From Octopus sinensis (lineage: Eukaryota): 64,000 bases of DNA. Position 1 is the first letter of the stretch. Every line of letters begins with the position of its first letter. A model generated the notes under the pieces. The model was not told the origin of the DNA, did no database searches, and saw only the letters and a program-made list of their open reading frames with translations. A program made the translations under genes and the position numbers. Below, piece by piece: positions 42,971 to 44,342 of this stretch. Location of the stretch: positions 192,510,001 through 192,574,000 of the forward strand of contig NC_042998.1 in the NCBI RefSeq assembly GCF_006345805.1, in the 5' to 3' direction.

Positions 42971-43143
42971 AATATATATATATATATATATATATTAATT
43001 TATATATAGAGGGCATTATACATACATGCCAGACGGCATTATACATACATGCCAAACGCTAAGAGGGACAATCAGTCATTTCTACCAAAAATATTACTAA
43101 TCCCACTGAATGCAATTTTTCAAAGTAAGACATTTAAAAATAT

Positions 43144-43191
43144 AGACCTGTATCACAGTGATTTCATACTTACGTAATCATCAGCAGGCCT
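43144..43191 (-). ncRNA. Type I hammerhead ribozyme motif, left arm copy
   Basis: AGGCCUG CUGAUGA UUACGUAAGUAU GAAA UCACUGUGA UA CAGGUCU. Stem I has 7 bp with one G.U pair. Confidence 0.75.
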
Positions 43192-43952
43192 GAATGTATT
43201 ATAAATAAACAACGACCCTGCCCCGCTTAAGCCGATCAGCTAACTGATCAACATCAACGAAGCACATGGGTGAGTTTACATATATTACATCCGGGTAAAT
43301 GGCAAACTTTTACGAATTGCATTTCGGGAGAGGAAAAGTTTTTTCGGAATAAAAATTTAGCAATTAAGGACAACTACTTAATAAGGAAAACTTAACAAGA
43401 AATTGTCAGGTAGATAGCGTAAAAACCTCATAAGAGAAAAAATTTCGAAAATAATTATTTCTTATTGAACATATTAATTATATATAGAGGGCATTATACA
43501 TACATGCCAGACGGCATTATACATACATGCCAAACGCTAAGAGGGACAATCAGTCATTTCTACCAAAAATATTACTAATCCCACTGAATGACTGATTGTC
43601 CCTCTTAGCGTTTGGCATGTATGTATAATGCCGTCTGGCATGTATGTATAATGCCCTCTATATATAAATTAATATGTTCAATAAGAAATAATTATTTTCG
43701 AAATTTTTTCTCTTATGAGGTTTTTACGCTATCTACCTGACAATTTCTTGTTAAGTTTTCCTTATTAAGTAGTTGTCTTAATTGCTAAATTTTTATTCCG
43801 AAAAAACTTTTCCTCTCCCGAAATGCAATTCGTAAAAGTTTGCCATTTACCCGGATGTAATATATGTAAACTCACCCATGTGCTTCGTTGATGTTGATCA
43901 GTTAGCTGATCGGCTTAAGCGGGGCAGGGTCGTTGTTATTTATAATACATTC

Positions 43953-44000
43953 AGACCTGCTGATGATTACGTAAGTATGAAATCACTGTGATACAGGTCT
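43953..44000 (+). ncRNA. Type I hammerhead ribozyme motif, right arm copy
   Basis: AGACCUG CUGAUGA U-UAC-GUAA-GUA-U GAAA UCAC-U-GUGA UA CAGGUCU. Stem I is a perfect 7 bp, the core is intact, and stem III is palindromic. Predicted cleavage is after A43993. Confidence 0.8.
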
Positions 44001-44266
44001 ATATTTTTAAATGTCTTACTTTGAAAAATTGCATTCGGTGGGATTAGTAATATTTTTGGTAGAAATGACTGATTGTCCCTCTTAGCGTTTGGCATGTATG
44101 TATAATGCCGTCTGGCATGTATGTATAATGCCCTCTATATATAAATTAATATGTTCAATAAGAAATAATTATTTTCGAAATTTTTTCTCTTATGAGGTTT
44201 TTACGCTATCTACCTGACAATTTCCTGTTAAGTTTTCCTTATTAAGTAGTTGTCCTTAATTGCTAA

Positions 44267-44342
<76 letters not shown>

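What the first reader, a model, noticed from the sequence alone, without database searches (positions are those of the whole stretch)
42992..44270. ~480-bp tandem repeat carrying an intact type I hammerhead: candidate cephalopod non-LTR retrozyme
Seen in the sequence: the unit (period 479-480 bp) contains AGACCUG-CUGAUGA-UUACGUAAGUAU-GAAA-UCACUGUGA-UA-CAGGUCU. This has a complete catalytic core and a 7-bp stem I, and the only difference between the two copies in stem I (A/G) keeps pairing. Stem II is short (UAC-GUAA-GUA, closed by U.U rather than the usual G-C). Stem III is the palindrome AUCAC-U-GUGAU, which cannot fold well alone. Established knowledge: tandem repeats with one type I hammerhead per monomer and an unstable stem III occur in newt satellite 2, Dolichopoda pDo500 and Schistosoma Sm-alpha, and metazoan non-LTR retrozymes yield small circular RNAs. 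Inference: this is a member of a self-cleaving, circRNA-producing, non-coding retroelement family, probably active as a dimer. I do not recall a description of it in cephalopods but cannot check that.
Basis: partly seen in the sequence, partly recalled or inferred. Interest (0 to 1): 0.9.

Follow-up and report, generated by a model that had tools for sequence, protein, structure and literature searches.

The report
Hammerhead retroelement inserted as fold-back
This is one young insertion of a ~477-bp non-coding mobile element carrying a minimal self-cleaving (hammerhead) RNA motif; its head-to-head layout inside a (TA)n microsatellite matches the known insertion pattern of Penelope-like retrotransposons, so it is a new example of a known kind.

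Summary
The hammerhead motif is real. Two sites (+43953-44000; -43191-43144) match a type I hammerhead descriptor; at the observed stringency, 1500 shuffled windows gave no match. The locus is not a simple tandem repeat. It is a head-to-head fold-back of two partial dimers (1.25 and 1.44 units of 477-478 bp), joined at a 4-nt microhomology, with both outer ends in (TA)n. Each strand has only one hammerhead, so this locus cannot release a unit-length or circular RNA. Helix III does not fold alone but gives a stable double hammerhead with a second copy. The monomer RNA is strongly structured (z = -6.8). Weak points: Rfam scores the motif 16 bits against a cut-off of 52; the conserved G10.1-C11.1 pair is U.U; helix II has 3 bp; no other copy could be retrieved; and the cephalopod origin could not be verified. 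Partial tandems, an inverted 5'-truncated copy, a (TA)n target and a minimal dimer-type hammerhead are published hallmarks of Penelope-like element (PLE) integration. Best reading: a probably dead-on-arrival copy of a non-autonomous, PLE-mobilised retrozyme-type element. It is a new member of a known kind, of modest interest.

The parts
42972..42991 (.). (AT)n microsatellite abutting the outer (3') end of the left arm; presumed half of the (TA)n target site
42992..43080 (-). L2: partial unit (unit positions 1-89), 3'-most part of the left arm; ends in the unit's own TA-rich tract
   Evidence: 100% identical to reference unit
43081..43558 (-). L1: full unit of the left arm (478 nt; 2 mismatches and 3 single-base indels versus the reference unit R1)
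43144..43191 (-). Hammerhead-like motif of the left arm (AGGCCUG...CAGGUCU); predicted cleavage between 43151 and 43150 on the minus strand
43559..43590 (-). L0: unit positions 446-477, the 5'-truncated start of the left arm; a 32-nt segment with no mirror partner at the centre
43587..43590 (.). Head-to-head junction: the 4 nt AATG/CATT are shared by both arms (microhomology)
   Evidence: direct reading
43587..44063 (+). R1: full unit of the right arm (477 nt, used as reference unit)
43953..44000 (+). Hammerhead-like motif of the right arm; predicted cleavage after A43993
44064..44270 (+). R2: partial unit (unit positions 1-~206), 3'-most part of the right arm
44271..44342 (.). (TA)n microsatellite abutting the outer (3') end of the right arm; presumed other half of the target

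Best explanation
The locus is a single, young insertion of a ~477-nt non-coding retroelement of the retrozyme / non-autonomous Penelope-like element (PLE) kind. It carries one minimal type I hammerhead per unit. Shown: Two arms lie head-to-head, with the 5' ends of the hammerhead-sense strand at the centre and the 3' ends outward. Each arm is longer than one unit. The arms are joined at a 4-nt microhomology, and both outer ends sit in a (TA)n microsatellite. The copies differ by about 0.5%. Inferred mechanism: A PLE-type GIY-YIG endonuclease nicked a (TA)n tract. Both DNA ends primed reverse transcription on a circular or multimeric sense RNA, which explains why each arm exceeds one unit, why each arm carries an uncut hammerhead site, and why the 3' ends fall at different AU-rich internal positions. 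The two cDNAs were then joined in the middle. In productive family members with at least two hammerheads in tandem, two motifs would pair through the palindromic helix III into a double hammerhead, cut after the A of AUA, and release a 477-nt RNA that a tRNA ligase could circularise. This particular locus has one hammerhead per strand, so it is probably a dead-on-arrival copy. A read-through transcript would fold into a ~600-bp hairpin.
For: Anatomy: searches give the arms, unit coordinates, junction and differences. The motif is far from chance: 2 sites against 0.008 per window for a relaxed descriptor, and 0 in 1500 shuffles at the observed stringency. The Rfam HH9 alignment gives the same core assignment. 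The dimer is favoured: monomer MFE is -10.9 kcal/mol and is not the hammerhead fold, helix III pairs have ~1.5% probability, two copies reach -29.5 kcal/mol as a classical double hammerhead, and the helix III duplex is -10.1 kcal/mol. The unit RNA is strongly structured and strand-asymmetric (z = -6.8 sense, -4.65 antisense). Both ends abut (TA)n; the only placements in the window where a segment of this length does so are those at this locus. Published PLE hallmarks match: partial tandems, an inverted 5'-truncated copy at the 5' end and a (TA)n target preference (PMC8557442); minimal dimer-type hammerheads with a palindromic helix III, sometimes as pairs 100-700 bp apart on opposite strands (PMC4209133). 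Retrozymes have been proposed, and in Xenopus shown by sequence homology, to be PLE derivatives (PMC7761336; bioRxiv 10.64898/2026.07.22.740005). The inverted repeat stops at the element's ends and the outer flanks are unique, which argues against a chimeric-read artefact.
Against: Rfam does not recognise the motif: 16 bits against a cut-off of 52. The G10.1-C11.1 pair, described as highly conserved even in PLE mini-hammerheads (PMC4209133), is U.U here, and helix II has only 3 bp, so catalytic competence is uncertain. Only two near-identical hammerhead copies exist, so conservation and covariation are untestable. No other family member was found in the window or in any collection. The window has no PLE RT or endonuclease. 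The two arms end at different unit positions (~89 and ~206), which needs the extra assumption of internal priming on a template without a fixed 3' end. No target-site duplication can be read inside the microsatellite. The host organism is unverified.
Confidence: 0.65

Rival explanations
1. The element family is the same, but the fold-back arose at the DNA level. A pre-existing short tandem array was partly duplicated in inverted orientation by replication template switching or break-induced fold-back repair, using the 4-nt microhomology. It was not made during retrotransposition.
For: The junction has 4-nt microhomology and a 32-nt asymmetric spacer, as is typical of fold-back inversions. The arms differ as little from each other as units do within an arm.
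Against: This needs a second breakpoint that happens to rejoin the left arm to the same (TA)n tract. The head-to-head orientation with 3' ends outward and more than one unit per arm is exactly the published PLE insertion pattern (PMC8557442).
Confidence: 0.15
2. The hammerhead resemblance is fortuitous. The repeat is an ordinary low-copy satellite or fragment of another transposon without ribozyme function.
For: The Rfam score is far below the cut-off. There is no G10.1-C11.1 pair and helix II is weak. The monomer MFE is not the hammerhead fold, and the motif fold z-score is not significant. A relaxed descriptor would give roughly 300 chance hits in a 2.5-Gb genome. The two copies stem from one event and count as one observation.
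Against: At the observed stringency there were no hits in 1500 shuffled windows. Every core nucleotide is present. The helix III palindrome is the feature expected for dimer-type animal hammerheads. The motif sits in a more-than-unit-length, (TA)n-targeted, inverted/tandem insertion with a highly structured RNA. These independent features all point to the HHR-bearing PLE/retrozyme world.
Confidence: 0.08
3. The inverted duplication is an assembly artefact, such as a chimeric or palindromic long read, and the true locus is a single 1.4-unit insertion.
For: PLE-type tandem/inverted structures are known to trouble assemblies (PMC8557442). Arm identity is ~99%.
Against: The palindrome is confined to the element. 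The outer flanks are unique and are not mirror images. The arms differ at several positions, are asymmetric at the centre (32 nt) and end at different unit positions. None of this is expected from a read-level palindrome.
Confidence: 0.05
4. The fold-back now functions as a hairpin-RNA locus, a source of endo-siRNA/piRNA or an ADAR substrate, regardless of its origin.
For: The near-perfect arms would give a ~600-bp dsRNA stem. Rfam hairpin (miRNA) models score weakly at the centre. All three substitutions between copies are transitions.
Against: The Rfam hits are generic hairpin matches far below cut-offs. There is no evidence of transcription or conservation. Three substitutions carry no statistical weight.
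Confidence: 0.05

Closest known systems
Minimal type I hammerheads of Penelope-like elements and PLE-type insertions (Cervera & de la Pena 2014, PMC4209133; Craig et al. 2021, PMC8557442)
   Same: Type I topology, a palindromic helix III that needs a second copy, and no evident loop-loop contacts. The motif sits in a repeat arranged as a partial tandem with an inverted 5'-truncated copy. The hammerheads are paired on opposite strands within a few hundred bp. The target is a (TA)n microsatellite.
   Different: There is no RT/GIY-YIG ORF; the whole element is 477 nt. Helix II is short (3 bp, against 6-8 bp in PLE mini-hammerheads) and helix I is longer (7 bp, against 4-5). G10.1-C11.1 is replaced by U.U. 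Similarity to an autonomous PLE pLTR was not testable.
Metazoan non-LTR retrozymes (Cervera & de la Pena 2020, PMC7229834; Li et al. 2026 preprint, 10.64898/2026.07.22.740005)
   Same: A non-coding unit of a few hundred bp with low GC, one type I hammerhead per unit, a highly self-paired RNA, a more-than-unit-length genomic copy, and predicted dimer-dependent cleavage as in amphibian retrozymes.
   Different: This locus has no head-to-tail pair of hammerheads and is a fold-back. Copy number, multimers and circRNA expression are unknown. At 477 nt the unit is above the 170-400 nt range first described, though within the 51-972 bp range of the 2026 survey.
Newt satellite 2, Schistosoma Sm-alpha and cave-cricket pDo500 hammerhead satellites
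   Same: Repeats carrying a type I hammerhead with a weak helix III; the double-hammerhead (dimer) mechanism (Forster et al. 1988, as cited in PMC4209133).
   Different: Those are long, high-copy tandem arrays with a canonical G10.1-C11.1 pair and, in Schistosoma, loop-loop tertiary contacts. Here there is a single 2.7-unit fold-back with a deviant helix II.
L1 twin-priming inversions (established knowledge of LINE-1 integration; from memory, not checked here)
   Same: Both ends of a nicked target prime reverse transcription, and the cDNAs join at microhomology, giving inverted segments.
   Different: L1 twin priming inverts adjacent, non-duplicated parts of one linear RNA. Here both arms carry the same sequence and exceed unit length, which requires a circular or multimeric template.

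Membership tests
Hammerhead ribozyme, type I | Conserved core C3 U4 G5 A6 N7 G8 A9 / G12 A13 A14 / A15.1-U16.1 / H17 | tested here: met
   All positions are present in both copies. The Rfam HH9 alignment places them identically.
Hammerhead ribozyme, type I | Three helices around the core, with the open end at helix I | tested here: met
   Helix I has 7 bp. Helix II has 3 bp plus a GUAA loop. Helix III forms only as a 4-bp hairpin (~1.5% of the ensemble) or as a 10-bp intermolecular helix in a dimer.
Hammerhead ribozyme, type I | G10.1-C11.1 closing pair of helix II | tested here: not met
   U.U in both copies, flagged as non-standard by cmscan. Described as highly conserved in PMC4209133.
Hammerhead ribozyme, type I | Score at or above the Rfam gathering threshold for a hammerhead family | tested here: not met
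   No hit at gathering or at E<=10 in 1.5 kb. HH9 scores 16 bits against 52 when 86 nt are searched.
Hammerhead ribozyme, type I | Helices supported by covariation across copies | tested here: inconclusive
   There are only two copies, from one event, with one one-sided change (A-U to G.U in helix I).
Hammerhead ribozyme, type I | Site-specific self-cleavage | not testable with these tools
   Needs in vitro transcription of monomer and dimer constructs.
Metazoan non-LTR retrozyme | Non-coding unit of a few hundred bp, low GC, no LTR/PBS/PPT | tested here: met
   The unit is 477-478 bp with 33% GC. The longest stop-to-stop frame is 55 codons and has no homologs.
Metazoan non-LTR retrozyme | Head-to-tail repeats with at least two hammerheads in the same orientation, so that a monomer can be excised | tested here: not met
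   Each arm has 1.25-1.44 units and a single hammerhead, and the two hammerheads are on opposite strands. This applies to this locus only; the family may differ.
Metazoan non-LTR retrozyme | Stable, highly self-paired monomer RNA | tested here: met
   Circular MFE is -125.5 kcal/mol, z = -6.8, 65% paired; the antisense z is -4.65.
Metazoan non-LTR retrozyme | Multiple dispersed and multimeric copies in the genome | not testable with these tools
   This is the only locus in the 64-kb window. The source genome is not available. Public collections gave nothing.
Metazoan non-LTR retrozyme | Expression as unit-length linear and circular RNA | not testable with these tools
   No transcriptome access.
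PLE-type (Penelope-like) insertion, non-autonomous | Partial tandem (more-than-unit copy, pLTR-like) | tested here: met
   The right arm covers unit 1-477 plus 1-206. The left arm covers 446-477 plus 1-477 plus 1-89.
PLE-type (Penelope-like) insertion, non-autonomous | Inverted 5'-truncated copy adjacent to the 5' end | tested here: met
   The arms are head-to-head with sense 5' ends at 43587-43590 and 3' ends outward. The pattern is described in PMC8557442.
PLE-type (Penelope-like) insertion, non-autonomous | Insertion into a microsatellite, (TA)n for the Neptune/Naiad-type endonuclease | tested here: met
   (AT)n is at 42972-42991 and (TA)n at 44271-44342. No other placement in the window gives this.
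PLE-type (Penelope-like) insertion, non-autonomous | Sequence similarity to the pLTR or 3' end of an autonomous PLE in the same genome | not testable with these tools
   The window has no PLE RT or GIY-YIG, and neither the genome nor Repbase is available.

The most novel reading that the evidence does not exclude
The unit represents a lineage-specific (possibly cephalopod) retrozyme family whose hammerhead lacks the canonical G10.1-C11.1 pair (U.U instead) yet still cleaves as a dimer. Its PLE-style fold-back insertions would give direct footprint evidence that PLE machinery mobilises retrozyme circRNAs, while also seeding long hairpin-RNA loci (ADAR or small-RNA substrates).
Probability: 0.12. 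Interest if true: 0.55.

Novelty: new member of a known kind. Interest (0 to 1): 0.3.

Why it matters
If it holds up, the locus adds one more animal lineage to the known range of hammerhead-bearing non-autonomous retroelements. It also shows, on a 477-nt non-coding element, the structural footprints of Penelope-like integration: a more-than-unit copy, an inverted 5'-truncated partner and a (TA)n target. The link between animal retrozymes and PLEs has so far been argued from co-occurrence (PMC7761336) and from sequence similarity in Xenopus (2026 preprint). Insertion footprints would be an independent line of evidence. Neither the 2020 retrozyme paper nor the 2026 preprint's main text mentions inverted copies, and the 2020 paper does not mention microsatellite targets. 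This is still a single, probably inert locus. It does not change the picture of hammerhead biology.

Tried and rejected
(1) Rfam at gathering score over the window, at E<=10 over 1.5 kb and at E<=0.05 over the window. No hammerhead was found; the only hits were hairpin or microsatellite pseudo-hits to miRNA models.
(2) Search for more copies. blastn and nhmmer of the unit against the window found only this locus. Two hammerhead-based patterns gave 0 matches: the first in JGI metagenomes, GTDB genomes and IMG/VR, the second in JGI metagenomes only.
(3) Indirect route through the protein index. The unit's incidental ORFs, concatenated as one query, gave no hits, and exact look-ups of two window ORFs found nothing on record.
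(4) Organism identification. A LINE RT fragment (26991-27461) has 87% identical protein homologs (91% at DNA level for contig L003), but only in anonymous ENA assemblies (ERZ25072740, ERZ27289496) without names. The fetched contigs share only that RT with the window and carry no copy of the unit. The cephalopod origin therefore stays unverified.
(5) Lunse et al. 2017 on dimeric PLE hammerheads (PMC5785218) is not held.
(6) Considered and rejected: a heavily 5'-truncated autonomous PLE. The 477-nt periodicity recurs seamlessly three times, so the whole element is 477 nt.
(7) Considered and rejected: a template that was a linear hammerhead-cleaved monomer. The arm ends are not at the cleavage site, and both arms contain an intact site.
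(8) tRNA/Pol III-type head: ARAGORN found nothing.

Full report
OBSERVATION. Read as a type I hammerhead, it has these parts:
- helix I: AGACCUG/CAGGUCU, 7 bp
- core: C3-U-G-A-U-G-A9
- helix II: UAC-GUAA-GUA, flanked by U and U at positions 10.1 and 11.1
- G12-A-A, then A15.1...U16.1 enclosing the palindrome AUCAC-U-GUGAU

A descriptor search that I wrote finds exactly two sites in the 64-kb window: this one, and a copy on the minus strand at 43191-43144. Dinucleotide shuffles of the window give 0.008 hits per window for a relaxed descriptor. At the stringency actually observed they give none in 1500 shuffles. Scaled to a 2.5-Gb genome, the relaxed descriptor would still give about 300 chance hits, so context matters as well as the motif.

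THE LOCUS IS NOT A SIMPLE TANDEM REPEAT. I take 43587-44063 as the reference unit (477 nt). The right arm on the + strand is unit 1-477 (43587-44063) followed by unit 1-~206 (44064-44270). The left arm is on the minus strand. Read 5' to 3', it is unit 446-477 (43590-43559), unit 1-477 (43558-43081) and unit 1-89 (43080-42992).
- The two arms are head-to-head. The 5' ends of the hammerhead-sense strand meet at 43587-43590, where the 4 nt AATG/CATT are shared by both arms. The 3' ends point outward.
- Each arm holds more than one unit (1.25 and 1.44) but only one hammerhead, and the two hammerheads are on opposite strands.
- The period is 477-478 bp, not 479-480 bp.
- All copies differ by six single-copy changes in about 1.28 kb, roughly 0.5%. 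One is the A-to-G change in helix I (A-U to G.U). That change is one-sided, not a compensatory covariation.
- Both outer ends run directly into (TA)n. The only placements in the window where a segment of this length is flanked by (TA)>=8 on both sides are those at this locus.
- The inverted repeat stops at the element's ends, and the outer flanks are unique.

THE MOTIF AS A RIBOZYME.
- Rfam finds no hammerhead at gathering score, nor at E<=10 in a 1.5-kb search. When only 86 nt are searched, Hammerhead_HH9 appears at 16 bits against a cut-off of 52. Its alignment agrees with the core assignment above and flags the 10.1-11.1 pair as non-standard.
- As a monomer, the 48-nt RNA prefers a competing fold (-10.9 kcal/mol) over the hammerhead fold (-8.9 kcal/mol). 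Helix III pairs have about 1.5% probability, and the palindrome alone does not fold.
- Two copies co-fold into a classical double hammerhead at -29.5 kcal/mol, against 2 x -10.9 for separate monomers. It has a 10-bp intermolecular helix III with a central U.U (-10.1 kcal/mol).
- Catalytic competence is still uncertain. The G10.1-C11.1 pair is described as highly conserved even among PLE mini-hammerheads (PMC4209133). Here it is U.U, and helix II has only 3 bp.

THE UNIT RNA. The 477-nt monomer, started at the predicted cleavage site, has 33% GC. Folded as a circle, its MFE is -125.5 kcal/mol, against -88.9 +/- 5.4 for shuffles (z = -6.8), with 65% of bases paired. The antisense strand gives z = -4.65. 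A stable, highly self-paired, strand-asymmetric RNA is what is described for retrozyme circRNAs (PMC7761336). The unit has no meaningful ORF: the longest frame is 55 codons and has no homologs.

WHAT IT IS. The literature supplies an explanation for the odd architecture.
[quoted passage not shown] (TA)n microsatellites are preferred targets of Naiad elements, and the endonuclease linker was proposed to mediate the microsatellite bias in Neptune PLEs too (PMC8557442).
- PLE pLTRs carry minimal type I hammerheads with a palindromic helix III that are thought to act as dimers. Pairs of such motifs 100-700 bp apart on opposite strands have been noted (PMC4209133).
- Animal non-LTR retrozymes are short non-coding repeats with one type I hammerhead per unit (PMC7229834). 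They have been proposed to be mobilised by PLEs (PMC7761336). In Xenopus they were recently shown to be related in sequence to PLE pLTRs (bioRxiv 10.64898/2026.07.22.740005).

The present locus shows all four footprints on an element whose whole length is 477 nt. The periodicity recurs seamlessly three times, so it is not a truncated 3-kb PLE.

LIKELY MECHANISM (inferred). A PLE endonuclease nicked a (TA)n tract. Both DNA ends then primed reverse transcription on sense RNA. Three features indicate that the template had no fixed 3' end and an intact cleavage site, that is, a circular or multimeric RNA:
- each arm exceeds unit length
- each arm contains an uncut hammerhead site
- the arms end at different AU-rich internal positions (unit ~89, inside UAUAUAUAAAUUAAUAU, and unit ~206)

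The two cDNAs were joined at the 4-nt microhomology. In productive family members with tandem hammerheads, the double hammerhead would release a 477-nt RNA with 5'-OH and cyclic-phosphate ends, which a tRNA ligase could circularise (mechanism as in PMC7229834). This locus has one hammerhead per strand, so it cannot do that. It is most likely a dead-on-arrival copy, and a read-through transcript would form a ~600-bp hairpin.

RIVALS.
- DNA-level fold-back of a pre-existing short array. The microhomology and the 32-nt spacer fit, but a second breakpoint into the same (TA)n tract is needed.
- A fortuitous motif. The weak Rfam score and the deviant helix II favour this. The complete core, the palindrome, the architecture and the RNA structure argue against it.
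- An assembly artefact. Unique flanks, asymmetry and differences between the arms argue against it.
- A hairpin-RNA locus. There is no evidence beyond the shape.

LIMITS.
- No other family member could be retrieved. There is none in the window, in JGI metagenomes, GTDB genomes or IMG/VR, or through the protein index.
- The window contains no PLE RT or endonuclease. It holds only fragments of a mariner-like element, a LINE, Pif1/Helitron-like elements and a pogo-like element.
- The organism could not be identified.
- If the source is an octopus, 31 recently active PLE families are reported for O. vulgaris (PMC13282606). 235 Rfam Hammerhead_1 loci were listed for the giant squid (PMC6962438). 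I found no dedicated description of cephalopod retrozymes.

VERDICT. The motif is real, but the "tandem repeat" is wrong: the locus is a PLE-style fold-back insertion. The retrozyme-type interpretation is partly supported. Activity and family size are untested. This is a new member of a known kind, with interest about 0.3.

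Noticed in passing
window 44343-44975: A Tc1/mariner-like remnant starts exactly where the right-hand (TA)n ends (TA|CAGAGGTTGGACAAAATAATGG...). It carries a minus-strand ORF matching DDE_3 (E = 7e-6, just below the Pfam cut-off). The other terminal repeat is not in the window, and the element is cut off near 44975 by another repeat. 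So the same (TA)n tract received two different transposon insertions.
   Followed up: partly
window 29128-32641: A 1659-bp unit is repeated 2.1 times head-to-tail at 99.5% identity. TRF misses it because the period exceeds 500. It has no microsatellite flanks and no hammerhead core. It looks like a recent tandem duplication of unknown nature.
   Followed up: partly
window 3143-3627, 28604-28973, 36175-37098, 57334-58055: SINE-like ~176-184-bp units (GTATTTCGTCTGCCGTTACGTTCTGAGTTCAAATTCCGCCGAGGTCGAC...) occur as short tandem arrays of 2-5 copies at several places. ARAGORN finds no intact tRNA-like gene in them.
   Followed up: no
window 21838-22138, 34423-34563, 45296-45454, 56063-56261, 62005-62162: A second dispersed family of ~60-67-bp tandem units (GGCACGTAAAAAGCACCATCCG...GCCAGC...) recurs on both strands throughout the window.
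   Followed up: no
window 26991-27461: A LINE-type reverse-transcriptase C-terminal fragment (157 codons, open). Its closest protein homologs (87% identity; 91% at DNA level for contig L003) are on short contigs of anonymous ENA assemblies (ERZ27289496; more distant ones in ERZ25072740). This suggests DNA of the same or a closely related animal in those datasets.
   Followed up: partly
window 62886-63600, 34159-34377, 55345-55662: By eye, these frames look like Pif1/Helitron-type helicase C-terminal fragments (...KSQGQTL...) and a pogo/Tigger-like DDE transposase fragment. This was not checked against Pfam.
   Followed up: no
window 18207-19446, 14764-15409, 40830-41489, 47902-48349: Very long microsatellites: (TATG)~310, (TGG)~217, (TGA)n ~660 bp and (ACAT)~112. 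They produce spurious long ORFs and many weak Rfam miRNA pseudo-hits.
   Followed up: no
window 43608-43659 and its copies 43008-43058, 43486-43536, 44086-44136: Inside each unit, a 23-nt segment (GGCATGTATGTATAATGCCGTCT) is duplicated in tandem. Each copy is itself a small hairpin (GGCAU...AUGCC). Its function is unknown, but it contributes to the strong predicted structure of the unit RNA.
   Followed up: no
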